A stretch of 64,000 nucleotides of DNA, taken from contig NC_043026.1 of NCBI RefSeq assembly GCF_006345805.1, positions 11,759,579-11,823,578 on the forward strand. Direction: 5' to 3'. The DNA comes from Octopus sinensis (lineage: Eukaryota). The number at the start of each line of letters is the position of its first letter. Position 1 is the first letter of the stretch. The notes under the pieces were generated by a model that was given only the letters and a program-made list of their open reading frames with translations, made no database searches and was not told where the DNA came from. Both the position numbers and the translations under genes were made by a program. Positions 982 through 63,411 of the stretch are shown piece by piece.

Positions 982-1208
982 TTGATAAACAAACGAGGAA
1001 AAGATCCGATGCAAGCAGATAAATATGCAGGATACATACAGATGCACACACATACATACGTACATGCATGCATGTATAGGCACACACACACACACACACA
1101 AACAAAAAAGGAACGCAGTGTAAATAACGGTCAGTCAAGACTTTAAAAGGTTGCAAGACGCAACGAAAATTTTAGGAGAATAAAATAATAAGAAGTGGAA
1201 ATTTTACC

Positions 1209-1751
1209 GGCGCAGGAGTGGCTGTGTGGTAAGTAGCTTGTTTACCAACCACATGGTTCCGGGTTCAGTCCCACTGCGTGGTACCTTGGGCAAGTGTTTT
1301 CTACTATTGCCTCGGGCCGACCAAAGCCTTGCGAGTGGATTTGGTAGACGGAAACTGAAAGATGCCCGTCGCATATATATATATATAAATATATATAGGC
1401 GCAGGAGTGGCTGTGTGGTAAGTAGCTTGTTTATCAACCACATGGTTCCGGGTTCAGTCCCACTGCGTGGTACCTTGGGCAAGTGTTTTCTACTATTGCC
1501 TCGGGCCGACCAAAGCCTTGCGAGTGGATTTGGTAGACGGAAACTGAAAGATGCCCGTCGCATATATATATATATAAATATATATAGGCGCAGGAGTGGC
1601 TGTGTGGTAAGTAGCTTGTTTACCAACCACATGGTTCCGGGTTCAGTCCCACTGCGTGGTACCTTGGACAAGTGTCTTCTACTATAGCCTCGGGCCGACC
1701 AAAGCCTTGCGAGTGGATTTGGTAGACGGAAACTGAAAGAAGCCCTTCGTA

Positions 1752-1800
<49 letters not shown>

Positions 1801-2015
1801 TTGTGCGTCTGTGTTTGTCCCCCTAGCATTGCTTGACAACCGATGCTGGTGTGTTTATGTCCCCGTTACTTAGCGGTTCAGCAAAATAGACCGATAGAAT
1901 AAGTACTGGGCTTACAAAAGAATAAGTCCCGGGGTCGAGTTGCTCGATTAAAGGCGGTGCTCCAGCATGGTCGCAGTCAAATGACTGAAACAAGTAAAAG
2001 AGTAAGGAGAGTAAA
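1209..2015 (+). mobile_element. tRNA-SINE family A with a triplicated 189-bp head
   Basis: A/B-box head GGCGCAGGAGTGGCTGTGTGG..GGTTCAGTCC, MIR/CORE-like CCTTGGGCAAGT, (TA)n linker and (AGTAAAAG)n tail; heads start at 1209, 1398 and 1587. Confidence 0.88.
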
Positions 2016-2159
2016 GTGTGTTACATTATAAGGCACAAAAAGAAAATGACTCTCCCCAGACACAACAGAATATGCTTCAATACACGAACTCATATAAAGA
2101 ATCTTGCAAACCAAATCCAAAAACGAAATACCAAATATATTTTCAGAAAAAAAAAAAAA

Positions 2160-3315: not shown

Positions 3316-3909
3316 GAGCTGGCAGAAACGTTAGCACGCCGGGCGAAATGCGTAGCCGTATTTCGTCTGCCGTTACGTTCTGAGTTCAAATTCCGCCGAG
3401 GTCGACTTTGCCTTTCATCCTTTCGGGGTCGATAAATTAAGTACCAGTTACGCACTGGGGGTCGATGTAATCGACTTAATCCATTTATCTGTCCTTGTTT
3501 GTCCCCTCTGTGTTTAGCCCCTTGTGATTATAAAGAAATAGATATTTCGTCTGCCGTTATGTTCTGGGTTCAGAATCCGCCGAGGTCAACTTTGCCTTTC
3601 ATCCTTTCGGGGTCGATAAATTAAGTACCAGTTACACACTGGGGTCGATGTAATCGACTTAATCCGTTTGTCTGTCCTTGTTTGTCCCCTCTATGTTAAG
3701 CCCCTTGTGGGTAATAAGGAAATAGATATTTCGTCTGCCGTTATGTTCTGAGTTCAGATTCCGCCGAGGTCGACTTTGCCTTTCATCCTTTCGGGGTCGA
3801 TAAATTAAGTACCAGTTACACACTGGGACCGATGTAATTGACTTAATCCGTTTGTCTGTCCTTGTTTGTCCCCTCTGTGTTTAGCCTCTTGTGGGTAGTA
3901 AAGAAATAA
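3316..3909 (+). mobile_element. tRNA-SINE family B, 3 tandem bodies
   Basis: GAGCTGGCAGAAACGTTAG head, B-box GAGTTCAAATTCC, body TTCATCCTTTCGGGGTCGATAAATTAAGTACCAG. Confidence 0.85.
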
Positions 3910-7444: not shown

Positions 7445-8211
7445 GACTTGCTTGTGTGAATTCGTGTGTGTCTAGTCAACGCAGTACAATGAGTGAACGA
7501 TTTACCACAGATATCACACTGATATGGCTTCTCTCCAGTATGAATGCGTTTGTGTACAGTTAACTCACCACTTTCAGAGAATGATTTATCACAGATGTTA
7601 CAGTGATACGGCTTCTCTCCTGTATGGACTCGCTTGTGTCTAGTTAAGTAACCACCCTGGGAGAATGATTTACCATAGATATCACAGCAATATAGCTTCT
7701 CCCCTGTATGAATACGCTTGTGACATATCAAATTAGTAGGTCCAGTGAATGATTTACCACAAATACCACAGTGATATGGCTTCTCTCCTGTATGAATTCG
7801 TGTGTGTCTAGTCAACGCAGTACAATGAGAGAATGATTTCCCACAGATATCACAGCAATACGGCTTCTCTCCTGTATGAATACGCTTGTGAGAATTTAAA
7901 GCAGTACGTTTAGAGAATGATTTACCGCAAATACTACAGTGATATGGCTTCTCTCCTGTATGTACAAGTTTATGTGTAGTTAGGGTAGATTTGTGAGAGA
8001 ATGATTTACCACAGATATTACAGCAATATGGTGTCTCTCCTGTATGAATACGTTTGTGAGAAATGAGGTAGCTACACCTGGAGAAGGAATTACCACAGAT
8101 ATCACACTGATATGGCTTCTCTCCTCTATGAATCCATTTGTGAGAAGTTAAGTAATGAAGTTGAGAGAATGATTTATCACAAATATCACAGTGATATGGT
8201 GTCTCTCCTGT
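7445..8211 (-). pseudogene. Start-less near-identical copy of ZNF-A middle fingers, inserted in the ZNF-A 3' UTR
   Basis: 7491-8211 matches 9757-10474 with only a handful of differences. There is no ATG and an upstream in-frame TAA; both flanks are 3'-UTR sequence seen uninterrupted in the paralogues. Confidence 0.85.
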
Positions 8212-8401
8212 CTCTCTTTGGGGAGGTTATCACACACTGTTGAGTCTCTTTTCCAATGTGAATACATTTATAGTTATAGATGAAGGTGTTTATTCCTGAT
8301 CTTCGTACAAAAACACATTTGATAGTAAAACATATCCCTTCATGCTTTAACAAGTAACTAAAAGAGCTTGGCATCATTAAAATTTCAACCAATGTAAAAG
8401 A

Positions 8402-8737
8402 AAACAATTGCAGCGTGGAAGGTGTTTGTAAGCCATTTAAGAAACACACAAAAACCGTTCGATTCACTTCAACATTTAAGTTTAATTTGTCAAAATATTT
8501 TCATCGCTTTAAGACCGCGACCTTCTCACTGACAAAAATCCGTGCTGCATTTTGTCAGTGAACAGGTCGTGGTCTTAAAGCGATGAAAATATTTTGACAA
8601 ATTAAACTTAAATGTTGAAGGGAATTGAACGGCTTTTGTGTGTTTCTTAAATGGCTTACAAACACCTTCCACGCTGCAATTGTTTTCGTTTCAGCACACG
8701 ATCTCAGATCAAATCACTTGCCATGCAAGTACATCTC

Positions 8738-8789
<52 letters not shown>

Positions 8790-8987
8790 GCAGCACGGAT
8801 TTTTGTCAGTGAAGAGGTCGCGGTCTTAAAGCGACGAAAATATGTTGACAAATTAAACTTAAATGTTGAAGGGAATTGAACGGCTTTTGTGTGTTTCTTA
8901 AATGGCTTACAAACACCTTCCACACTGTGATTGTTTTCGTTTCAGCACACGATCTCAGATCAAATCACTTGCTATGCAAGTACATCT
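8402..8987 (+). mobile_element. Insertion of the same HHR-bearing unit (1 inverted + 2 direct copies), Penelope-like
   Basis: 13-bp TSD CCAATGTAAAAGA (8389-8401 and 8988-9000). The paralogous 3' UTRs have the empty site, and the 5' part is inverted. Confidence 0.85.
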
Positions 8988-9460
8988 CCAATGTAAAAGA
9001 CTACCTCAGAAAGGCAGCTATGATGAGTAGCTTGGCTGATGTCATGGGTAAAGTTCACAAAGGTAAGCCCACATTGTTTCAGGAGGAACTTAAAATGTTT
9101 GAAGTTCTTAGGAAATTTCCCATTGATACACTTAGACTTCTGCAGGGATACAAACATGTCCAGTTAAGCTACAACTTTGAGAGAATGATTTACCACAAAT
9201 GTCCCAGTGAAGTGGCTTCTATCCTCTATGAATACATTATATATTTTTAAATTCCTACTTCTGGAGAATGTCTTTCTGCAAATATCATGTTTATATGGTT
9301 TCTCTCCTGTATGAATATATTTGTGCTTAGGCAAAGAATCAAAATGGGAGAATGATTTAACAGATATCACACTGGTATGTCTCTTCTCTTATATGTTTGC
9401 GTTTGTTAGGAGAATATTCTCAGTAAATAATTTACCATACACATAATGGTAATGTGGCTT

Positions 9461-10738
9461 CTACACGGTATGAGTCCGTTTGTGTCTTCTTAACTTACTA
9501 CTTTCACAGAATGATTTACCACAAATATCACAACAATAAGGTTTCTCTCCCGTGTGAATACGTTTATGTATTGTTAACGAACTGCTGACAGAGAATGATT
9601 TGCTGCAGATATCACATTCATATGGCTTCTCCCCGGTATGAACACGTTTGTGAGAAATGAGATAACTACATCCAATGAAGGACTCACCACAGATATCACA
9701 CTGATATGGCTTCTCTCCTGTATGAATCCGTTTGTGAATGGTTAAGGAAGTATTTCGAGTGAACGATTTACCACAGATATCACACTGATATGGTTTCTCT
9801 CCTGTATGAATGCGTTTGTGTACAGTTAACTCACCACTTTCAGAGAATGATTTATCACAGATGTTACAGTGATACGGCTTCTCTCCTGTATGGACTCGCT
9901 TGTGTCTAGTTAAGTAACCACCTTGGGAGAATGATTTACCACAGATATCACAGCAATATAGCTTCTCCCCTGTATGAATACGCTTGTGACATATCAAATT
10001 AGTAGGTCCAGTGAATGATTTACCACAGATATCACAGTGATATGGCTTCTCTCCTGTATGAATTCGTGTGTGTCTAGTCAACGCAGTACAATGAGAGAAT
10101 GATTTCCCACAGATATCACAATACGGCTTCTCTCCTGTATGAATACGCTTGTGAGAATTTAAAGCAGTACGTTTAGAGAATGATTTACCGCAAATACTAC
10201 AGTGATATGGCTTCTCTCCTGTATGTACAAGTTTATGTGTAGTTAGGGTAGATTTGTGAGAGAATGATTTACCACAGATATTACAGCAATATGGTGTCTC
10301 TCCTGTATGAATACGTTTGTGAGAAATGAGGTAGCTACACCTGGAGAAGGAATTACCACAGATATCACACTGATATGGCTTCTCTCCTCTATGAATCCAT
10401 TTGTGAGAAGTTAAGTAATGAAGTTGAGAGAATGATTTATCACAAATATCACAGTGATATGGTGTCTCTTCTGTATGAATACGTTTGTGTTTAGTGAGCG
10501 TAGATTTCTGAGAGAATGATTTATCACAGATATCACAGTTATATGGTTTCTCTCCTGTATGAATACGTTTGTGTGTAGTTAGGTTTCCATTCTGAGAATA
10601 TGATGCACCACAGATATCACAGCGATATGGTTTCTCTCCTGTATGAATACGCTTATGTTGAATTAGGTTACCATTCTGGGAGAATGACTTTTTACAGATA
10701 GTACAGTCATATAATGGTTTTGTTGTATCTTTAGGCAT
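9461..10738 (-). CDS. C2H2 zinc-finger protein ZNF-A, 425 aa, 15 tandem fingers, single coding exon
   Basis: Uninterrupted ORF of C-x2-C-x12-H-x3-H repeats joined by TGEKPY linkers. The start context CTGAAGAC-ATG is conserved in all five paralogues. Confidence 0.93.
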
Positions 10739-14186: not shown

Positions 14187-14945
14187 TATTTCTTTATTGC
14201 CCCCAAGGGGCTAAACATAGAGGGGACAAACAAGGTTAGACAAACGGATTGAGTCGATTACATCGACCCCAGTGCGAAACTGGTACTTTATTTATCGACC
14301 CCGAAAGGATGAAAGGCAAAGTCGACCTTGGCGGAATTTGAACTCAGAACGTAACGACGGACGAAATGCCTATTTCTTTACTACCCACAAGGGGCTGAAC
14401 ATAGAGAGGACAAACAAGGACAGACAAACGGATTAAGTCGATTATATCGACCCCAGTGCGAAACTGGTACTTTATTTATCGACCCCGAAAGGACGAAAGG
14501 CAAAGTCGACCTTGGCGGAATTTGAACTCAGAACGTAACGGCAGACGAAATACCTATTTCTTTACTACCCACAAGGGGCTAAACACAGAGGGGACAAACA
14601 AGGACAGACAAATGGATTAAGTCGATTACATCGACCCCAGTGCGAAACTGGTACTTTATTTATCAACCCCGAAAGGATGAAAGGCAAAGTCGACCTTGGC
14701 GGAATTTGAACTCAGAACGTAACGGCAGACGAAATACCTATTTCTTTACTACCCACAAGGGGCTAAACACAGAGGGGACAAACAAGGACAGACAAATGGA
14801 TTAAGTCGATTATATCGATCCCAGTGCGAAACTGGTACTTTATTTATCGACCCCGAAAGGCTGAAAGGCGGAATTTGAACTCAGAACATAACGCAGACGA
14901 AATACAGCTAAGCATTTCGCCCGGCGTGCTAACGTTTCTGCCAGC
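14187..14945 (-). mobile_element. SINE B, 4 tandem bodies
   Basis: Unit of about 187 bp. Confidence 0.85.
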
Positions 14946-17828: not shown

Positions 17829-18163
<335 letters not shown>

Positions 18164-18198
18164 TCACAGGTAATGCAGTTATCACATTAATATGGCTT

Positions 18199-19719
18199 CT
18201 ACCCTGTATGAACACGTTTGTGAGTAATGAGATTACTACTTCCGGAGAAGGACTTACCACAGATATCACACTGACATGGTTTCTCCCCTGTATGACTACG
18301 GTCGTGCAGCCTTAAGTGACTACTTGTTGTAAATGATTTACCACAGACATGACAGGAATAAGGTTTCTCTCCCGTATGAATACGTTTATGTATTATTAAA
18401 GAACCCCTAACGGAGAATGATTTGCTGCAGATATCACACTGATATGGCCTCTCCCCTGTATGAACACGTTTGTGAGTAATGAGATAACTACATCTAGTGA
18501 ACGTTTTACCGCAGATATCACACTGACATGGCTTCTCTCCTGTATGAATCCGATGGTGCATCCTTAAGTGACTACTAGCAGCAAATGATTTCCCACAGAT
18601 ATCACAACGATACGGCTTCTCCCCTGTATGAATTAACTTGTGAGAATTCAAAGCACTACTTTCAGAGAACAATTTGCCACAAATACCACAGTGATGTGGC
18701 TTCTCTCCTGTATGAATACGTTGGTGAGATGTTAAGGCACCACCGACAGAAAATGATTTACCACAGATATCACAGTGGTATGGCTTCTCTCCTGTATGAA
18801 TACGTTTGTGTTTAGTTAGTTTACCACTTCCAGAGAAGGATTTGCCACAGATATTACACTGATATGGCTTCTCCCCTGTATGAATCCGTTTGTGATAAGT
18901 CAGGGTAGAAATCTGAGAGAATGATTCACCACAGATATAACAGCTATACGGCTTCTCTCCTGTATGAATTCGCTTGTGAGTATTTAAAGCACTACTTCCA
19001 GAGAATGATTTACCACAGATATTACACTGATATGGCCTCTCTCCTGTATGTATACGCTTGTGAGATGTGAAGCTACTACGTATAGAGTATGATTTACCAC
19101 AGATATCACAGCAGTATGGCTTTTCTCCTGTATGAATACGGTTGTGAGAAATTAAGTAATGAAACTGAGTGAATGATTTACCACAAATACCGCAGTGATT
19201 TGGTGTCTCACCTGTATGAATACGTTTGTGTGTAGTCAGGCTTGCATTCTGACAGAACGACTTGCCACAGATGTTACATTGAAACGGCTTTTCTCCTGTA
19301 TGAACACGGCGGTGAGATATCAAGTTGGTATGCACAGAGAATGATTTACCACAGATATCACAGCAATACGGATTCTCTCCTGTATGGATTCGCTTGTGGA
19401 AATATAAAGCACTCCCTCCAGAGAACGATTTACCACAAACATCACAGTGATATGGCTTCTCTCCTGTATGAATACGTCTGTGTGTAGTTAGCTGTCCATT
19501 CTGAGAGAAGGATTTGCCACAGATATCACACTGATATGGCTTCTCTCCTGTATGAACTCGACGGTGAGATGTTAAGTTACTATGTACAGAGAATGATTTC
19601 CCACAGATATCACAGCAATATTGTTTCTTCCGCTTATGTTTAATTAAGTTACCATTCTTGGAGGATGACTTTTCACAAATGTCTAATTCACACGATGGTT
19701 TTCCTGTATCTTTAGACAT
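18199..19719 (-). CDS. C2H2 zinc-finger protein ZNF-B, 506 aa, 17 intact fingers plus a degenerate first finger
   Basis: Open ORF with TGEKP-linked fingers. It ends at a TAG in the linker Glu position; two decayed fingers follow down to about 17779. Confidence 0.9.
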
Positions 19720-31969: not shown

Positions 31970-32530
31970 TTATGATGATTCTTCCCAAATATAACAATAT
32001 TGGTCTCAACACAGTAAACACATTCACAATCCAGAAGAAATTGCTTTTATGAAAAATGTTGCAGAGTTAGGATATCCCAAGTGTTTAGGTGTTTTAATAT
32101 AAAATAACATAAAATACAGTGTGGGGAGACTGTTGGCATAGATGTTATGTCTCCTTTCCAATGTGAATACATTTACAGTTATAGATGAGGGTGTTTATTC
32201 CTGATTTCCATACAAAGAAATTTGAGAGGTTACTATAAGAGGTTGGCATAATTAAAAGTTCAACCAGCTGTAAAAGACTACCTCAGAAAGGCAGCTATGA
32301 TGAGTGGTTTGGTTTATGTCATGGGTAAAGTTCACAAAGCTAAGGTTACCTCACTTCAGGAAGAACTTAAAATGCTTGATGACAATATTAAGAATTTTCA
32401 CATTGGTACAGTTACACTTCTGCAGGGATACATACAAGTCCAGTTAAGCTACAACTTTGAGAGAATGATTTACCACAAATCTCACAGTAAAGTGGCTTCT
32501 ATCCTCTGTGAACACATTTAAGCATTTTTA

Positions 32531-32749
<219 letters not shown>

Positions 32750-32828
32750 TTATATGTTTGTATTTGTGTATTGTTAAGAGGATATTCGTAGTAAATGATT
32801 TACCATACACATAATGGTAATGTGGCTC

Positions 32829-34104
32829 CTACACTGTATGAGTGCGTTTGTGTCTTCTTAACTTACTACTTTCACAGAATGATTTACCACAAATATCACA
32901 ACAATAAGGTTTCTCTCCCGTGTGAATACGTTTATGTATTATTAAGGAACTACTGACTGAGAATGATTTGCAGCAGATATCACATTCATATGGCTTCTCC
33001 TCTGTATGAACACGTTCGTGAGAAATGAGATAACTACATCCAGTGAAGGACTCACCACAGATATCACACTGATATGGCTTCTCTCCTGTATGAATGCAGT
33101 GGTGTGTACTTAAGTGACTACTTCCAGTAAATGATTTACCACAGATACTACAGTGATATCTCTCCTGAATGAACACGTTTGTGTTTAGTTAGGGTAGAAT
33201 TCTGAGAGAATGCTTTACCACAGAGATCACAGCGATATGGCTTCTCACCTGTATGACTTCGCTTGTGAGAATTTAAGACACTACTTCCAGAGAAAGATTT
33301 ACCACAAATGCCACATTGATATGGCCTTTCTCCAGTATGTAAACGTTGGTGGAATGCTAAGCTGCTATGTATAGAGTATGATTTACCACAGATATCACAG
33401 CAGTAGGGCTTTTCTCCTGTATGAATACGCTTATGAGAAGTTAGGTATTGAAATTGAGAGAAAGATTTGCCACAAATACCACAGTAATTTGCTGACTCCC
33501 CTGTATGAATACGTTTGTGTGTAGTCAGGCTTCCATTCTGAGAGAATGATTTGCCACAGATATCACACTGATATGGCTTCTCTCCTGTATGAACACGTTG
33601 GTGAGATCTTAATATGCTTTGTACAGCGAATGATTTACCACAGATATCACAGCAATATGGCTTCTCTCCTGTATGAATTCGCTTGTGAAAATAAAAAGCA
33701 CTCCCTCGAGAGAATGATTTACCACAAATAGCACAATGATATGGCTTCTCTCCTGTATGAATACGTTGGTGTGTAGTTAACTGATCACTTCCACAGAATG
33801 ATTTACCACAGATATCACAGTGATATGGTTTCTCTCCCGTGTGAATACGTTTGTGTTTAGTTAGGCTTCCATTCTGAGAGAATGATTTACCACAGATATT
33901 ACACTGATATGGCTTCTCTCCAGTATGAACACGTTTGTGTGTAGTCAGATGTGCACTCTGAGAGAACGATATACCACAGATATCACAGCAATATGGTTTC
34001 TCTCCCGTATGAATACGCTTATGTTTAATTAGGTGACTCTTCTGGGAGAATGACTTTTTACAGATATCAAGGTCACACGATAGTTTTCTGGTATCCTTAG
34101 GCAT
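32829..34104 (-). pseudogene. ZNF-C: 11 in-frame fingers, then a 5-bp deletion frameshift and 4 out-of-frame fingers (truncated gene or pseudogene)
   Basis: The ORF from MPKDTRK (ATG about 34104) runs to 33148. The linker lacks GGCTT at 33159/33160, and fingers 12-15 continue in another frame to the stop at 32829. Confidence 0.85.
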
Positions 34105-38563: not shown

Positions 38564-38861
38564 TCACTTCAGTAGGAACTTAAAATGATTTACCACACAC
38601 ATAACACTAAGGTGGTTTCTCCACTGTATGAGTATATTTGTGTTTTCTTAACTTACTACTTTTATAGAATGGTTTAACACAAATATCACAGAAATAAGGT
38701 TTCTCTCCTGTATGAATATATTTGTGCTTAGGCAAAGAATCAAAATGGGAGAATGATTTAACAGATATCACACTGGTATGTCTCTTCTCTTATATGTTTG
38801 CGTTTGTTAGGAGAATATTCTCAGTAAATGATTTACCATACACATAATGGTAATGTGGCTT

Positions 38862-40057
<1,196 letters not shown>

Positions 40058-48742: not shown

Positions 48743-50863
48743 ATGCCTAAAGATACAAGAAAACCATCACATGACTGTGATATCTGTAAAAAGTCATTCT
48801 CTCAAAAGTGTAATCTAACTAGCCATAAACTTATTCACACAGGTGAGAAGCCATATCGCTGTGATATCTGTGGTGAATCATTCTCTGTACGTAGCAGTCT
48901 AACCACACATGTACGTGTACATACAGGAGAAAAGCCATATCAGTGTGATATCTGTGGTAAATCATTCTCTGTACGTGGTAGCTTAACAACACATAAGCAT
49001 GTTCATACAGGAGAGAAGCCATATCAGTGTGATATCTGTGGTAAATCATTCTCTGTACATGGCAGCCTAACAACACATGTACGTGTACACACAGGAGAGA
49101 AGCCATATCAGTGTGATATCTGTGGTAAATCATTCTCTGTGCGTAGTAGCTTAACAACACATAAACATGTACACACAGGAGAAAAGCCATATCAGTGTGA
49201 TATCTGTGGCATATCATTCACTGAAACTGGTCACTTAACGGTACACAAACGTGTTCATACAGGAGAGAAACCATATTGCTGCGATGTCTGTGGTAAATCA
49301 TTCTCTCGGAATGGTAACCTAACGAAACACAAACGAATTCATACAGGAGAGAAGCCATATCACTGTGATATCTGTGGTAAATCATTCCCTGGCAGTGGTG
49401 ACTTAACTACACACAAACGTAGTCATACCGGAGAGAAGCCGTATCATTGTGGTATCTGTGGTAAATCATTTTCTGCAAAGTGTGCTTTAACTTCTCACCA
49501 AAGTGTGCATACAGGCGAGAAGCCATTTCACTGTGATGTCTGTGGTAAATCATTCTCTCGAATTAATTACTTAGCTGCTCACAAGCGTATTCATACAGGA
49601 GAGAAGCCATATCACTGTGATATCTGCGGTAAATCATTCAGTCAAGGCAATGACTTGACTAAGCACCACCGTATTCATACAGGGGAGAAGCCTTATCACT
49701 GTGAAATCTGTGGTAAATCATTCTATGGAAGTAGTGAATTAACTGGCCACAAACGTCTTCATACAGGAGAGAAGCGGTACCGTTGTGATATCTGTGGTAA
49801 ATCATTCACTCGAAATACAACCTTAACTACTCACAAACGAATTCATACAGGAGATAAGCCATATCAGTGTGATATCTGTAGTAAATCATTCTCCCAAATT
49901 GTCAACTTGACTGTGCACAAGCGTATCCATACAGGAGAGAAGCCGTATCGGTGTGATATCTGCAGCAAATCATTCTCTGTAATTCATAGCTTAAAACTAC
50001 ACAAACGTATTCATACAGGAGAGAAGCCATATCAATGTGATATCTGTGGTAAATCATTTAGTGCAAGCCTTAACTTAAAACGACACAAACGTATCCACAC
50101 AGGAGAGAAGCCATATCAGTGTGATATCTGTGGTAAATCATTCTCTGTACGTAGTAGCTTAACAACACATAGACGTATTCATACAGGAGAAAAGCCATAT
50201 CGCTGTGTTATCTGTGGTAAATCATTTTCTGAAAGTATTCACTTAACATCACACAAACAGATTCATGTAAAAGGAGAGACATATCAGTGTGATATCTGTG
50301 GTAAATCATTCTCCCAAATTCGTAATGTTACTAAGCACAAACGTATTCATACCGGAGAGAAGCCATATCAGTGTATTTTCTGTGGTAAATCATTCTGTGG
50401 AAGTGGTGAGTTAACTCTACACAAGCGTACTCATACAGGAGAGAAGCCATACCAATGTGATATCTGCGGTAAATCATTCTCTGGAGGTAGTGAGTTAACT
50501 ATACATAAACGTATTCATACAGGGAAGAAGCCATTTCACTGTGAGGTTTGTGGTAAGTCGTTCTCTCAAAGTAGTAATTTAATAACACACAAACGCATTC
50601 ATTCAGGGGAGAAACCATATCAGTGTGATATCTGTGGTAAATCATTTACTGTCAATAGTACCCTAATTTACCACAAACGTATTCACACAGGAGAGAAGCC
50701 ATACCAGTGCGATATCTGTAGTAAATCATTCTCCGTAAAAAGTACCTTAATAATACATAAACGTATTCATACAGGAGAAAAGCCTTATCATTGTGATATT
50801 TGCAGTAAATCATTCTCTGAAAGTAGTAAGCTAAAAGTACATAAACGTGTTCACACAGGCTAG
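48743..50863 (+). CDS. C2H2 zinc-finger protein ZNF-E, 706 aa, 25 tandem fingers
   Basis: Uninterrupted ORF with the same start context as the minus-strand paralogues; stop TAG falls at the linker Glu position. Confidence 0.94.
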
Positions 50864-50921
50864 AAGCCACACCATTGTTATATATATGGTAAATCATTCC
50901 CTCAAATTAGTAGCTTAATAG

Positions 50922-51029
<108 letters not shown>

Positions 51030-51052
51030 TAGAAGCCACATCACTGTGACGT

Positions 51053-53629: not shown

Positions 53630-54424
53630 ATATAATTTGTGTGCAGGAGTATGTATTGGGGTGGGGATCGGAGGCAGTCTGTTTTGTGGGGTGTGCGGGT
53701 GTGTACATGTGTGCTTTGGTCAAACTCTTTTTGCAGGGCCCGAGGGCATTGGTGGAAGATCGCTGGCGGAGGGTCGAAGTAAGGGACCTGTGATTGCAGT
53801 CATGGCGGAGCGCGCAGGTACGACAAAATGTACTTCCTTTCATGCGGGCAAGAAGTAAACACCTCACTCCTGCTATTCATGTAGACATCCGGGCATTGCG
53901 TACCGTTTAAGATTGCTCTCTTCTCAGCCAGGCATAATTAGCACTTCCTGCTGCTATTGAAGTACGATTTGCATTTTTCTAGGATCTTCCACTTACATAC
54001 ACAGGACTGAAGCACTTGAAGAATAAGATGTCACTCCGTGACGCATTCTCTCAAAGCCCAAACGTGCTTGGCCAGGTTTGTAGTGTTAAATTTCTTTGAG
54101 ATGTTGAAGGAGGACTTGTGGTTATTAACCCTTTAGCATTTAAACCGGCCATATCCGGCCAAAAGTATTCTGCCTGTTTTATGTTCAAACTAGCCACATC
54201 TGGTCTCTCACACCAACCCTACAATATCTTTTAAAAAATTAACAGCTACCTCATCAAAATCTCATAGTTGCAAGATAATGCATGATCAATTCAAAAGAAT
54301 GTGGATGAAGAAGCATTAATTTTGGTAGAATAATGCGAACACTAAAGGGTTAAAGTGGGTTCTGAAGTGGGCCTTCCATTGCCCCCACATACTTCCACAT
54401 GCTCAGGTGTCCATTGGGTCTGCC
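53630..54424 (-). mobile_element. Penelope-like element remnant: degenerate GIY-YIG endonuclease C-terminus and 3' UTR
   Basis: Manual translation KYVGAMEGP/FRTHFNNHKSSFN..TNLAKHVWAL..KWKILEKCKSYFNSSRKC*LCLAEKRAIL..NSRSEVFTSCPHERKYILSYLRAPP* matches the PLE YIG..HIW..CxLCxxEK..RSE..CxH pattern; it is interrupted by a piggyBac MITE. Confidence 0.85.
54129..54349. mobile_element. piggyBac-type MITE (same family as 10766) inside the Penelope remnant
   Basis: TTAA|CCCTTTAG...CTAAAGGG|TTAA; removing it restores HFNNHK. Confidence 0.9.
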
Positions 54425-54437
54425 ACTGACAAAACTA

Positions 54438-54914
54438 TGCAGCACGAAGTTTTCTCAGTGAAGAGGTCGCGGTCTCAAAGCGACGAAAATATTTTGACAA
54501 ATTAAATTTAAATTTTGAGGTGAATCGAACGGCTTTTGTGTGTTTCTTAAATGGCTTATAAACACCTTCCACGCTGCAATTGTATATATATATATAAACC
54601 TTATTCAGCATGGATTTTTGTCAGTGAACAGGTCGCGGTCTCAAAGTAACGAAAATATTTTGACAAATTAAACTTAAATGTTGAAGTGAATCGAACGGCT
54701 TTTGTGTGTTTCTTAAATGGCTTACAAACACCTTCCGCGCTGCAATTATATATATATATATATATAAACCTTATTCAGCATGGATTTTTGTCAGTGAACA
54801 GGTCGCGGTCTCAAAGCGACGAAAATATTTTGACAAATTAAATTTAAATTTTGAGGTGAATCGAACGGCTTTTGTGTGTTTCTTAAATGGCTTTTAAACA
54901 CCTTCCACGCTGCA

Positions 54915-54950
<36 letters not shown>

Positions 54951-55602
54951 TTATTCAGCATGGATTTTTGTCAGTGAACAGGTCGCGGTCTCAAAGTGAC
55001 GAAAATATTTTGACAAATTAAACTTAAATGTTGAAGTGAATCGAACGGTTTTTGTGTGTTTCATAAATGGCTTATAAACACCTTCCACGCTGCAATTGTA
55101 TATATATATATAAACCTTATTCAGCATGGATTTTTGTCAGTGAAGAGGTCGCGGTCTTAAAGCGACGAAAATATTTTGACAAATTAAACTTAAATGTTGA
55201 AGTGAATCGAACGGCTTTTGTGTGTTTCTTAAATGGCTTATAAACACCTTCCACACTGCAATTATATATATATATATATATATAAACCTTATTCAGCATG
55301 GATTTTTGTCAGTGAACAGGTCGCGGTCTTAAAGCGACGAAAATATTTTGACAAATTAAATTAAAATTTTGAGGTGAATCGAACGGCTTTTGTGTGTTTC
55401 TTAAATGGCTTTTAAACACCTTCCACGCTGCAATTGTATATATATATATAAACCTTATTCAGCATGGATTTTTGTCAGTGAAGAGGTCGCGGTCTTAAAG
55501 CGACGAAAATATTTTGACAAATTAAATTTAAATTTTGAGGTGAATCTAACGGTTTTTGTGTGTTTCTTAAATGGCTTTTAAACACCTTCCACGCTGCAAT
55601 TG
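54438..55602 (+). ncRNA. Tandem array of 7 minimal type-I hammerhead-ribozyme-like units (156-180 bp; retrozyme/Penelope pLTR-like)
   Basis: Each unit reads TTTGTCA-GTGAA(C/G)A-G-GTCGC-loop-GCGAC-GAAA-ATAT-TT-TGACAAA (stem I, core, stem II, GAAA, palindromic stem III, UH site, stem I). Confidence 0.75.
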
Positions 55603-55681
55603 TATATGTATGTGTATATATATATATAAAATAATATATAAATATATGCATATATACATACATGTATGTACATACCTACAT

Positions 55682-56511
55682 GGCGGCGAGCTGGCAGAAC
55701 CGTTAGCACGCCGAGCGAAATGCTAAGCAGTATTTCGTCTGCCGTTACGTTGTGAGTTCAAATTCCGCCGAGGTCGACTTTGCCTTTCATCCTTTCGGGG
55801 TCGATTAAATAGGTACCAGTTTCGCACTGGGGTCGATGTAATCGACTTAATACCTATGTCTGTCCTTGTTTGTCCCCTCTATGTTTAGCCCCTTGTGGGT
55901 AGTAAAGAAATAAGTTTGTCGATAACTTCCGTTACATTAAGAAACAACGGTTATCGAAGTTAACTTTTTGGTTAACGGTTAACGAAATTAACTTTTCGAT
56001 TAACTGTGCCCACCTTTGCTAATTACTGGTTATATAATAAATCAATCGATTGGTCTACGCCGAGTAGACGAAACAGAGACAATTGAAGAAGGAATATTCC
56101 CCTTCTTCAGTTGTCTCTGTTTCGTCTACTCCGCGTAGACCGATCGATTGATTTATTATATAACCAGTAATTAGCAAAGGTGGGCACAGTTAATCGAAAA
56201 GTTAATTTCGTTAACCGTTAACCAAAAAGTTAACTTCGATAACCGTTGTTTCTTAATGTAACGGAAGTTATCGACAAACTTATTTCTTTACTACCCACAA
56301 GGGGCTAAACATAGAGGGGACAAACAAGGACAGACATAGGTATTAAGTCGATTACACCGACCCCAGTGCGAAACTGGTACTTATTTAATCGACCCCGAAA
56401 GGATGAAAGGCAAAGTCGACCTCGGCGGAATTTGAACTCACAACGTAACGGCAGACGAAATACCGCAAAGCGTTTCGCCCGGCATGCTGACGATTCTGCC
56501 AGCTCGCCGCC
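55682..56511. repeat. ~830-bp spacer-less palindrome containing an inverted-duplicated SINE
   Basis: Arms of about 415 bp centred on AAT|ATT at 56095/56096. Confidence 0.93.
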
Positions 56512-62735: not shown

Positions 62736-63411
62736 CAAGGAGGTACTGAAAACGTTCCTGGCTTTAAGGGCATTACGAAGAAGGTAGAGCATTTACCTTT
62801 ACGGGGGTGGGGGTAGGATATCTGTTAGGAAGAAGATATGCAAAAAATCGTGATGGTATGAAATATATCTTTCTCTTTTTTGCAGATTTAACGCATGATG
62901 GCAGCTCCCACAGTGCATTTTAGTAAAACTGAAGCACGGGCAGTCATGAAGTTCCTCTTCTTGCAAGGCAAAGGAGCGGCAGAAATCCATGGCGAGATGA
63001 AGAAAGTCTTGAAGGAGCGCTGCCCATCTTACTCCACAGTGAAAATCTGGGTGTCGAGGTTTCGGACTGGTCATTTTGAAGTCACAGATGAACCCCGGTC
63101 GGGACGGCCAACTTCCGTGACGACAGAGGACAAAGCAGACATTGTGCATTTCATGATTCTCAAGGACCGGTGGATTTCGGCCAAAGTCATCGCCGAGACC
63201 CTGGGGATTTCCCGCGAAAGAGTTGGCCACATCATCCACAACATTCTGAACATGAGACAGCGTTCTGCAAAATGGGTGCCAAATAGCAAAACCGAAGGAC
63301 CTTCGGAAGAAGTGTGTGAATCCGAGAAAGGAATATGTTCAATAAAATCATAATTAACTGATTCTCCTGTATTTTCTTTTACACAAAACCAGGATCTTTT
63401 CAGCACACCCT

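What the first reader, a model, noticed from the sequence alone, without database searches (positions are those of the whole stretch)
54438..55602. Seven-copy tandem array of non-canonical hammerhead ribozymes (candidate octopus retrozyme)
Seen: seven units with cores at 54458, 54624, 54804, 54984, 55140, 55312 and 55478 (spacings 166/180/180/156/172/166 bp, varying mainly through a (TA)n tract). Each can be drawn as a type-I HHR: 7-bp stem I (UUUGUCA/UGACAAA), core, one extra G, 5-bp stem II (GUCGC/GCGAC), GAAA, a tiny stem III inside the palindrome AAAAUAUUUU, and a UU-U cleavage triplet. Four cores read GUGAACA, a G3-C8 swap of the conserved C3-G8 pair; three read GUGAAGA (G3/G8 mismatch), and the first unit also has a damaged stem I. 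Established: C3-G8 is a tertiary Watson-Crick pair whose compensatory swaps keep activity. HHRs with unstable palindromic stem III work as dimers. Tandem 150-400-nt type-I HHR repeats in animals (non-LTR retrozymes) can yield linear and circular RNAs, and minimal HHRs occur in Penelope-like elements. Inference: a transcript of this array could self-process into ~170-nt monomers or circles via double hammerheads. A standard CUGANGA search would miss this family. Caveat: shared variants in units 1/3 and 2/4 show that part of the array arose by DNA-level dimer duplication.
Basis: partly seen in the sequence, partly recalled or inferred. Interest (0 to 1): 0.92.

Follow-up and report, generated by a model that had tools for sequence, protein, structure and literature searches.

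The report
Octopus repeat with swapped-core hammerhead motif
A seven-unit tandem repeat in an Octopus sinensis zinc-finger gene region belongs to a small dispersed retroelement family that inserts like Penelope-like elements and carries a hammerhead-ribozyme-shaped motif in which a normally invariant C-G core pair is swapped to G-C or broken, so it may be a weak or dead ribozyme and only a bench test can tell.

Summary
The array is real: seven units of 166-180 bp at 54436-55622. Every unit draws as a type-I hammerhead with stems I (7 bp) and II (5 bp), an extra G before stem II, GAAA, and a 2-bp palindromic helix III. Rfam hammerhead models do not match, even at E<=10.

The array is one locus of a dispersed element of about 200-210 nt. 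Two more loci (window 8402-8987 and another chromosome) show an inverted 5' copy joined head-to-head to direct copies, (TA)n targets, a 56-nt tail at one end, and a 13-bp target-site duplication. This is the insertion pattern of Penelope-like elements.

All 12 copies have G3. Position 8 is C in 7, G in 4 and A in 1. Published mutagenesis shows C3G alone kills cleavage and C3G/G8C only partly rescues it.

The 12 young copies give one compensatory stem change and no detectable extra constraint on the motif. It is probably hammerhead-derived and retrozyme-like. Catalysis, circular RNAs and selection are untested. The verdict is a new variant of a known kind, of moderate interest.

The parts
54436..55622 (+). 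Seven-unit tandem array (u1-u7, 166-180 bp each). Each unit is the HHR-like motif, about 95 nt of conserved body, then (TA)n.
   Evidence: TRF; sequence; nhmmer; alignment A1; GC 32.7%
54451..54501 (+). u1 motif. Core GUGAAGA (G3/G8); stem I damaged (UUUCUCA). Predicted cleavage 54494/54495.
54617..54667 (+). u2 motif. Core GUGAACA (G3-C8); stem II 3' strand GUAAC gives a C.A mismatch. Predicted cleavage 54660/54661.
54787..54837 (+). u3 motif. Core GUGAACA (G3-C8); all stems intact. Predicted cleavage 54830/54831.
54967..55017 (+). u4 motif. Core GUGAACA (G3-C8); stem II has one G.U. Predicted cleavage 55010/55011.
55133..55183 (+). u5 motif. Core GUGAAGA (G3/G8 mismatch). Predicted cleavage 55176/55177.
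55305..55355 (+). u6 motif. Core GUGAACA (G3-C8); stems intact. Predicted cleavage 55348/55349.
55471..55521 (+). u7 motif. Core GUGAAGA (G3/G8 mismatch). Predicted cleavage 55514/55515.
54424..54434 (-). 11-nt inverted fragment CACTGACAAAA, the reverse complement of the unit's TTTTGTCAGTG, ending 1 nt upstream of the array. Read as a vestigial head-to-head 5' junction.
   Evidence: sequence; weak minus-strand CM hit 54419-54433
8402..8987 (.). Second locus of the same family: an inverted copy followed by two direct copies of the longer unit. Read as a single insertion event.
8404..8553 (-). L2inv, the inverted copy. Motif at 8486-8536 with core GUGAGAA (G3, G7, A8).
   Evidence: inverted arms 142-155 nt, 93-95% complementary
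8534..8784 (+). L2a, a direct copy 5'-truncated at TTTTGTCA. Motif at 8551-8601 with core GUGAACA. Includes the 56-nt 3' tail (8683-8738) and (TA)n (8742-8789).
8785..8989 (+). L2b, a direct copy with the full 5' end TGCAGCACGGA. Motif at 8802-8852 with core GUGAAGA and U16.1->G. 56-nt tail at 8934-8989.
8389..8401 (+). Left copy of the 13-bp target-site duplication CCAATGTAAAAGA.
   Evidence: exact 13-mer; the only short direct repeat reported in the 800 bp searched
8988..9000 (+). Right copy of the 13-bp target-site duplication CCAATGTAAAAGA.
48743..50863 (+). CDS of a 706-aa C2H2 zinc-finger protein. Its annotated gene range (48743 to about 65094) contains the array on the sense strand.

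Best explanation
The array is a locally amplified copy of a small dispersed non-autonomous retroelement of Octopus sinensis. The element is about 200-210 nt long, running from 5' TGCAGCACGGAUUUUUGUCA to CAAGUACAUCUCC 3'. It integrates the way Penelope-like elements (PLEs) do. Starting about 13 nt from its 5' end it carries a PLE-type minimal type-I hammerhead. In this family the universally conserved C3-G8 pair is replaced by G3-C8 (7 of 12 copies) or is unpaired (G3/G8 in 4 copies, G3/A8 in 1).

The most likely mechanism has four steps.
1. Dispersed copies are made by a PLE reverse transcriptase/GIY-YIG endonuclease acting in trans, with a preference for (TA)n targets. This leaves an inverted 5' copy, partial tandems, a one-sided tail and a target-site duplication. 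The architecture is shown; the enzyme is inferred.
2. At 54.4-55.6 kb one such insertion expanded to seven units by DNA-level duplication and gene conversion of one- and two-unit blocks. This is inferred from the shared variants.
3. The array lies on the sense strand inside a zinc-finger gene's annotated range, so it is probably transcribed. This is inferred.
4. In RNA, stems I and II form, as shown by folding. Two neighbouring units can pair their AAUAUU segments into a 6-bp helix III, giving a double hammerhead. G3-C8 units would then cleave after ..AUAUUU only weakly, and probably with protein help. G3/G8, G3/A8 and U16.1G units would be inert as catalysts.

Cleavage is probably not required for the family's spread.

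My sub-probabilities are:
- Motif is hammerhead-derived: 0.85.
- PLE-type mobilisation: 0.7.
- Measurable self-cleavage by C8 dimers: 0.35.
- Monomer or circular RNA production in vivo: 0.2.
For: Motif fit: every hammerhead position other than 3 and 8 is present (U4 G5 A6, A9, G10.1-C11.1, G12 A13 A14, A15.1-U16.1, U17), together with a 7-bp stem I and a 5-bp stem II. The minimum free energy fold of the 62-nt segment is exactly stems I plus II.

Chance: the loose descriptor hits only this family in the window and in 100 kb of other octopus DNA apart from two low-complexity hits. It gave 1 hit in 60 shuffles, 8 hits in 60 Mb, and 1 hit in 60 Mb at the real stem lengths.

[quoted passage not shown] A natural 3-8 covariation (U3-A8) is already known in PLEs (PMC4209133; PMC3088659).

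Retroelement architecture: window 8402-8987 has an inverted copy, two direct copies and an exact 13-bp TSD. L004 2590-2934, on another chromosome, has a head-to-head pair inside (TA)n, a 19-nt snap-back at the junction, and the tail at one end only. An 11-nt inverted stub sits at the array's 5' edge. These match the published PLE insertion structure and (TA)n bias (PMC8557442) and the PLE tail (PMC11167929).

Young Penelope families are annotated in O. vulgaris (PMC13282606).

The unit size, tandem arrangement and 32.7% GC fit non-LTR retrozymes (PMC7229834). Retrozymes derive from PLE pLTRs (bioRxiv 10.64898/2026.07.22.740005).

G3 is found in 12/12 copies across 3 independent loci, and C8 is found in the most diverged locus. 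The L004 stem changes all preserve pairing (G-C to A-U, C-G to U.G, U-A to U.G), and L004 has no core change.

The C3G/G8C double mutant partly restores cleavage in a PLE hammerhead (PMC11167929).
Against: - No Rfam hammerhead model, or any other ribozyme family, matches, even at E<=10 on the 1.45-kb region.
- 5 of 12 copies lack a 3-8 pair. The G8 form recurs on several unit backgrounds in both window loci, which suggests that 3-8 pairing is not needed for propagation.
- Covariation support is weak: one double change from one locus, and the shuffle control reaches the observed value 34/500 times.
- The motif region is as variable as the rest of the unit: 11/51 variable columns against 19/82.
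- Helix III is all A-U (duplex about -4.6 kcal/mol), and tandem-dimer folding prefers non-hammerhead alternatives.
- The monomer is only modestly structured (z -1.8), unlike the highly self-paired retrozyme circles.
- No PLE RT/EN was found in the larger ORFs of the window, and no homology to a PLE pLTR could be tested.
- The chance rate of the loose descriptor scales to tens or hundreds of hits in a genome of about 2.8 Gb.
Confidence: 0.6

Rival explanations
1. Dead relic. The family descends from a PLE or retrozyme hammerhead, but a C3-to-G change in the master copy killed the ribozyme. C8 is a neutral variant, and no copy cleaves. The element spreads because PLE machinery does not need cleavage, and the array is an ordinary small satellite grown by unequal crossing-over.
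For: A single C3G change abolishes activity, and HHR mutants do not impair PLE insertion in vitro (PMC11167929). G8, C8 and A8 all coexist. The motif shows no excess conservation over the rest of the unit. PLE min-HHRs are already poorly active in vitro (PMC4209133). Shared variants point to DNA-level block duplication. No Rfam match.
Against: C8, the one base that restores a Watson-Crick 3-8 pair, is the majority state and is present in the most diverged locus. By chance that has a probability of about 1/4. All other core positions are intact in 10 of 12 copies. The stem changes in L004 all preserve pairing.
Confidence: 0.3
2. Fully functional retrozyme. Array transcripts efficiently self-process through double hammerheads into monomers of about 170 nt that are ligated into circular RNAs, which act as the transposition intermediates.
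For: Unit length, tandem arrangement, low GC, type-I topology and palindromic helix III all match the retrozyme description (PMC7229834). The array lies on the sense strand within an annotated gene range.
Against: Only 4 of 7 units have a paired 3-8, and one of those four has a broken stem II. The swapped pair gives only partial activity (PMC11167929). The boundaries of the dispersed copies lie at TGCAGCACGG... and ...ACAUCUCC, not at the predicted cleavage site. Self-pairing is modest. There are no RNA data.
Confidence: 0.15
3. Chance look-alike. This is an AT-rich repeat that happens to contain two hairpins flanked by UGA, A and GAAA. It has no evolutionary link to hammerheads. The conserved hairpins serve another role, such as recognition by a reverse transcriptase, or none at all.
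For: The loose descriptor's rate of about 1.3e-7 per base implies hundreds of chance hits per genome of about 2.8 Gb, and one of them inside an amplified repeat would look exactly like this. The non-canonical position 3 is what a chance hit would usually show. No Rfam hit.
Against: At the real stem lengths the rate drops about 8-fold, and no simulated hit at those stem lengths had a palindromic helix III. Three features outside the descriptor match PLE-HHR hallmarks: the extra nucleotide before 10.1, G10.1-C11.1, and the palindromic loop 3 (PMC4209133). The host element independently shows PLE-type insertion architecture, which is the context where such motifs are expected.
Confidence: 0.1

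Closest known systems
Minimal type-I hammerheads of Penelope-like elements (Cervera & de la Pena 2014, PMC4209133; PAc element, PMC11167929)
   Same: Type-I topology. An unpaired nucleotide between A9 and G10.1. The G10.1-C11.1 pair. A tiny palindromic helix III implying dimers. No obvious loop 1-loop 2 contacts. The host insertions have an inverted 5' copy, partial tandems, (TA)n targets, a one-sided tail and a TSD. A natural 3-8 covariation (U3-A8) is known in this group.
   Different: Here the 3-8 pair is G-C, or mismatched, rather than C-G or U-A. The motif sits in an element of about 200-210 nt with no ORF. No homology to a specific PLE pLTR has been shown. Rfam hammerhead models do not match.
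Metazoan non-LTR retrozymes (Cervera & de la Pena 2020, PMC7229834; Li et al. 2026 preprint)
   Same: Tandem repeats of 150-450 bp with one type-I HHR per unit. Low GC. Occurrence from dimers to multimers. Co-occurrence with PLEs in the genome.
   Different: Described retrozymes carry canonical cores, often with loop-loop contacts, and give abundant, highly self-paired circular RNAs. Here the core is non-canonical, only 4 of 7 units have a paired 3-8, self-pairing is modest, and no RNA evidence exists.
Engineered C3G/G8C hammerhead double mutants (Martick & Scott 2006, as cited in PMC11167929; G3-C8 variant in PMC3884650)
   Same: The same base-pair swap at the same two core positions. Single changes kill activity and the double change partly rescues it.
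   Different: Those are laboratory constructs. This would be a natural family carrying the swap, alongside copies with G8, which on its own matches the canonical base.
Hammerhead satellites of newts, schistosomes (Sm-alpha) and Dolichopoda cave crickets (PMC2837043)
   Same: A short tandem or SINE-like repeat carrying one hammerhead per unit, with an unstable helix III and dimer-dependent cleavage.
   Different: Those have canonical CUGANGA cores and demonstrated cleavage.

Membership tests
Hammerhead ribozyme (any type) | Three-way junction: helices I and II flanking the core, with helix III closing at A15.1-U16.1 | tested here: met
   Stem I of 7 bp and stem II of 5 bp form the MFE of the 62-nt segment. 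They are paired in 98-99% of cells over 12 copies. Helix III is only 2 bp with a 2-nt loop, inside the palindrome AAUAUU, so an intermolecular or tandem dimer is needed.
Hammerhead ribozyme (any type) | Conserved core U4 G5 A6, A9, G12 A13 A14, A15.1-U16.1, and H17 not G | tested here: met
   All present in 11 of 12 copies. L2b has U16.1 changed to G.
Hammerhead ribozyme (any type) | C3 and G8 (tertiary Watson-Crick pair; U3-A8 is the known natural alternative) | tested here: not met
   G3 in 12/12 copies. Position 8 is C in 7, G in 4 and A in 1. The pair is isosterically swapped in 7 copies and absent in 5.
Hammerhead ribozyme (any type) | Match to curated covariance models (the Rfam hammerhead families) | tested here: not met
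   No hit at gathering score over the window, and none at E<=10 on 54300-55750.
Hammerhead ribozyme (any type) | Mg2+-dependent site-specific self-cleavage 3' of position 17 | not testable with these tools
   Requires in vitro transcription of dimer constructs.
Hammerhead ribozyme (any type) | Covariation supporting the helices across copies | tested here: inconclusive
   One double change (G-C to A-U, one locus) and several wobble-compatible transitions. Shuffles reach the observed score 34/500 times. The copies are 85-99% identical.
PLE-type minimal hammerhead | Nucleotide between 9 and 10.1; G10.1-C11.1; palindromic 15.2-16.2 and loop 3 (PMC4209133) | tested here: met
   Extra G after A9; GUCGC/GCGAC closes with G-C; AAUAUU is palindromic.
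PLE-mobilised element | Insertion architecture: inverted 5'-truncated copy, partial tandem, one-sided tail, TSD, microsatellite target (PMC8557442, PMC11167929) | tested here: met
   Window 8402-8987 has inverted arms of 142-155 nt, two direct copies and an exact 13-bp TSD. L004 2590-2934 has a head-to-head pair in (TA)n with the 56-nt tail at one end only. An 11-nt inverted stub sits at 54424-54434. The published tail is 30-40 bp; here it is 56 nt.
PLE-mobilised element | Sequence homology to the pLTR of an autonomous PLE in the same genome | not tested
   No octopus PLE sequence was available. There is no RT or GIY-YIG in the larger window ORFs. Penelope families are annotated in O. vulgaris (PMC13282606).
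Metazoan non-LTR retrozyme | Tandem repeat of 150-450 bp with one type-I HHR per unit; GC below 45% | tested here: met
   Seven units of 166-180 bp; GC 32.7%. The caveat is that the HHR core is non-canonical.
Metazoan non-LTR retrozyme | Expressed as linear and circular, highly self-paired RNAs of unit length | not testable with these tools
   No RNA data are available. The predicted fold of the 180-nt monomer is -37.2 kcal/mol with z -1.8, much of it from the (UA)n hairpin.

The most novel reading that the evidence does not exclude
This is a natural, catalytically competent hammerhead family whose universally conserved C3-G8 tertiary pair has been replaced by G3-C8. The 3-8 mismatched G3/G8 form still segregates in the same arrays, so the family would be a snapshot of compensatory evolution inside a ribozyme active site. 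It would also show that searches anchored on CUGANGA systematically miss part of the hammerhead and retrozyme diversity in animal genomes.
Probability: 0.25. Interest if true: 0.75.

Novelty: new variant of a known kind. Interest (0 to 1): 0.55.

Why it matters
Hammerheads are the most widespread small ribozymes, and C3-G8 is treated as nearly invariant. The papers I read report only U3-A8 as a natural alternative.

If the G3-C8 units cleave, this is the first natural example of the swap that structural biologists used to prove the 3-8 pair. It would also mean that genome censuses of hammerheads, retrozymes and PLE ribozymes need relaxed cores. The literature I could search mentions no hammerhead in cephalopods.

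If the units do not cleave, the family still matters. It would show a hammerhead-bearing non-autonomous element that keeps spreading after losing catalysis. That supports the recent in vitro finding that PLE integration does not need the ribozyme.

Either way, the two extra loci define a short Octopus retroelement with PLE-type insertion signatures. It appears to be abundant, at 3 loci in about 175 kb sampled.

Tried and rejected
1. Rfam at gathering score over the whole window, and at E<=10 on the region: no ribozyme family. The only hits were (TA)n/(TG)n look-alikes of miRNA models, which are artefacts.
2. Opposite strand and other ribozyme classes: nothing from Rfam, and the descriptor found no separate motif on the minus strand, only the inverted family copy L2inv.
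3. DNA pattern scans for more copies in metagenome (2 scans), viral and prokaryotic genome collections: 0 hits.
4. Fishing for other copies through spurious ORFs. A minus-strand frame of 58-60 aa reads the core state directly (TSSLT, TCSLT or TSSVT). The profile search gave 0 hits.
5. Zinc-finger homologue search to reach octopus paralogues: it returned only generic, mostly vertebrate, ZNFs and was useless for this purpose.
6. Exact look-ups of other window ORFs and of an O. bimaculoides protein: not on record.
7. Sampling through mariner-HTH paralogues worked. It gave 100 kb from two species and one new locus, L004.
8. CM R1 of the 51-nt motif, run with filters off over 146 kb: no further members. 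One marginal singleton at L004:11823 with core UUGGUGA was not accepted as a member.
9. tRNA-derived SINE head: ARAGORN finds none in 54000-56200.
10. PLE RT/EN nearby: none in ten of the 19 ORFs of at least 150 aa. One of the ten was a zinc finger and one a mariner HTH.
11. Test for extra constraint on the motif relative to the rest of the unit: no difference.
Full report
**1. The observation**

Tandem Repeats Finder reports a single array at 54436-55622 with a 166-bp period, 7.0 copies and 90% matches. A 338-bp period scores slightly better at 92%.

An approximate pattern search places the seven core heptamers at 54458, 54624, 54794, 54974, 55140, 55312 and 55478. The true spacings are 166/170/180/166/172/166, and the differences come from the (TA)n tract.

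The rest of the description holds:
- Each unit reads UUUGUCA-GUGAASA-G-GUCGC-(9 nt)-GCGAC-GAAA-AUAUUU-UGACAAA.
- Units 2, 3, 4 and 6 have C at core position 8. Units 1, 5 and 7 have G.
- Unit 1 has a G-to-C change in stem I.
- Unit 2 also has a C.A mismatch in stem II.

**2. Is the hammerhead drawing more than chance?**

It allows NUGANNA, 0-1 inserted nucleotide, stem II of at least 4 bp with a 3-12 nt loop, GAA, A15.1...U16.1 with a helix III of at least 2 bp, H17, and stem I of at least 5 bp.

- On both strands of the 64-kb window it hits only members of this repeat family.
- Sixty dinucleotide shuffles of the window gave one hit in total.
- In 60 Mb of first-order Markov sequence it gave 8 hits, 1 hit at the real stem lengths (I >=7, II >=5), and none at those stem lengths with a palindromic helix III.

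For one window the fit is far beyond chance. Across a genome of about 2.8 Gb, however, the loose descriptor would still find tens to hundreds of chance sites, so motif fit alone cannot carry the claim.

Thermodynamics agree locally. The minimum free energy fold of the 62-nt segment is exactly stems I and II.

Against the claim, the Rfam covariance models for hammerheads, and for every other ribozyme class, give nothing at gathering score. They also give nothing at E<=10 on the 1.45-kb region.

**3. What the array belongs to**

The same unit occurs at a second place in the window. Positions 8402-8987 contain the following:
- An inverted copy (8404-8553, minus strand) joined head-to-head to two direct copies of a longer unit.
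- The longer unit includes a 56-nt 3' extension (UUUUCGUUUCAGCACACGAUCUCAGAUCAAAUCACUUGCCAUGCAAGUACAUCUCC) and a (TA)n tract.
- The whole block is bracketed by an exact 13-bp direct repeat, CCAATGTAAAAGA (8389-8401 and 8988-9000). I read this as a target-site duplication.

To sample more of the genome, I first identified the source through an exact protein look-up. It is NCBI assembly GCA_006345805.1, chromosome CM016888.1. The assembly is Octopus sinensis, because a protein named as such maps to the same assembly.

Paralogues of a mariner-type HTH ORF then gave me 100 kb of unrelated DNA from O. sinensis and O. vulgaris. nhmmer found one more locus, on chromosome CM016860.1 (L004 2590-2934):
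- It is again a head-to-head inverted pair.
- It is inserted in a (TA)n microsatellite.
- It has a 19-nt snap-back fragment at the junction.
- The 56-nt extension is present at one end only.

The array itself is preceded, one nucleotide upstream, by an 11-nt inverted stub (CACTGACAAAA, 54424-54434) of the unit's 5' end.

An inverted 5'-truncated copy, partial tandems, a one-sided tail and microsatellite targets are the published signature of Penelope-like element (PLE) insertions (PMC8557442; PMC11167929). Penelope families, including young ones, are annotated in O. vulgaris (PMC13282606). [quoted passage not shown]

No RT or GIY-YIG ORF lies in the window. The family is therefore non-autonomous.

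Three loci in about 175 kb sampled suggests a high copy number.

**4. How well the motif fits known PLE and retrozyme hammerheads**

Cervera and de la Pena (PMC4209133) describe metazoan type-I hammerheads as having a 1-2 bp helix III capped by a 2-4 nt palindromic loop, which forces dimeric action.

[quoted passage not shown] All three are present here.

They and Perreault et al. (PMC3088659) also document natural covariation of the 3-8 pair to U3-A8. Variation at this pair is therefore not unprecedented, but neither paper reports G3-C8.

Unit length (166-180 bp), tandem arrangement and GC content (32.7%) fit the non-LTR retrozyme description (PMC7229834).

**5. The core**

Across 12 copies from three independent insertions, position 3 is G in every copy. 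Position 8 is C in 7 copies, G in 4 and A in 1.

The most diverged locus (L004, 85-88% identical to the others) has G3-C8 in both copies.

Direct experimental precedent exists in a PLE hammerhead, Anolis PAc (PMC11167929):
- C3G or G8C alone abolishes cleavage.
- The double mutant partly restores it.
- The ribozyme needs the element's protein.
- Catalytic mutants insert normally in vitro.

By inference, G3-C8 units could be weakly active, while G3/G8, G3/A8 and the U16.1G copy should be dead.

The G8 form recurs on different unit backgrounds in both window loci. That points to gene conversion, or to mixed source arrays. It also argues that 3-8 pairing is not required for propagation.

**6. Evolutionary signal**

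A formal count of the hammerhead pairs over the 12 copies gives 95.6% paired cells. It gives only one pair with changes on both sides (G-C to A-U in stem II), and both sequences carrying it come from L004, so it is a single event. Shuffles reach the observed covariation score 34 times in 500.

The other stem changes are mostly C-to-U or A-to-G transitions that leave wobble pairs. Two array units carry disruptive changes.

Variable columns are as frequent inside the 51-nt motif (11/51) as in the rest of the unit (19/82).

With copies this young, selection on the RNA can be neither shown nor excluded.

**7. Folding as dimers and monomers**

- The AAUAUU segments of two units can form the 6-bp helix III of a double hammerhead, but the duplex is all A-U (about -4.6 kcal/mol).
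- The tandem dimer has lower-energy non-hammerhead alternatives.
- The 180-nt cleavage-to-cleavage monomer folds to -37.2 kcal/mol with z -1.8, partly because of the (UA)n hairpin. This is less structured than retrozyme circles are described to be.

**8. Context**

The annotated gene for a 706-aa C2H2 zinc-finger protein (CDS 48743-50863) spans window 48743 to about 65094. The array therefore lies on the sense strand within that range.

Whether it falls in an intron or a UTR of some isoform is unknown. Transcription is plausible but not shown.

**9. Conclusion**

The best reading is a hammerhead-derived motif of the PLE/retrozyme type, with a swapped or broken 3-8 pair. It is carried by a short non-autonomous retroelement that integrates like a PLE. 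The seven-unit array is a local DNA-level expansion of one insertion: u1/u3, u2/u4 and u3/u6 are each other's closest relatives.

Catalysis by the C8 units is possible but unproven. I put measurable self-cleavage at about 0.35 and circular RNA production at about 0.2.

The main rival is a dead relic, and chance resemblance is unlikely but not excluded.

This is a new variant of a known kind. It would be notable if active, because G3-C8 was not among the natural variants reported in the papers I read and CUGANGA-anchored searches would miss it.

Noticed in passing
L004:11823-11869 (+) (O. sinensis CM016860.1): A singleton with hammerhead-like layout that shares stem I with the family: UAUGUCA-UUGGUGA-G-GUUGU-GAAUA-ACAAU-GAAA-GGACUU-UGACAAA. 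CM R1 scores it 23.6 bits, E about 0.004. The core deviates at positions 3 and 6. It may be a decayed older relative or a chance match.
   Followed up: partly
window 62895-63353 (+): A mariner-type HTH ORF of 152 aa. Its closest database relatives are proteins of the mantis shrimp Oratosquilla oratoria (73-79% identity), closer than most octopus paralogues (60-75%). This is a possible horizontally transferred mariner lineage.
   Followed up: no
window 2011-2071 (-), 1081-1210 (-); L004 2973-3108, 11889-12024, 4098-4175: An unrelated dispersed repeat of about 136 bp (GTTGTGTCTGGGGAGAGT.ATTTTCTTTTTGTGCC...). In L004 it lies immediately downstream of both the family insertion and the singleton HHR-like hit, but in the window it has no such neighbour.
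   Followed up: partly
window 55680-55900 and 1209-1775, 3359-3908, 14187-14869: Tandem arrays (184-189 bp period) of an apparently SINE-like octopus repeat. One copy abuts the 3' side of the hammerhead-like array. ARAGORN calls no tRNA in 54000-56200.
   Followed up: no
window 7453-8211, 9178-10712, 18070-19614, 32493-34069, 38584-39968, 48774-51049: Six C2H2 zinc-finger arrays (84-bp period) on both strands, so the window is part of an octopus ZNF gene cluster. Two of the three family loci sit within 4 kb of ZNF coding arrays.
   Followed up: no
window 54903-54966, 55597-55668: Sub-threshold Rfam hits to mir-297, mir-466, mir-1277 and similar families. They are caused by the (TA)n/(TG)n tracts and are artefacts of low complexity.
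   Followed up: yes
L004 2745-2790: At the junction of the head-to-head pair there is a 19-nt snap-back copy (CGGAATTTTGTCAGTGAAC) that ends exactly at core position 8. In all three loci the breakpoints of the inverted junctions fall within TTTTGTCAGTGAAC, that is, stem I 5' plus the core.
   Followed up: partly
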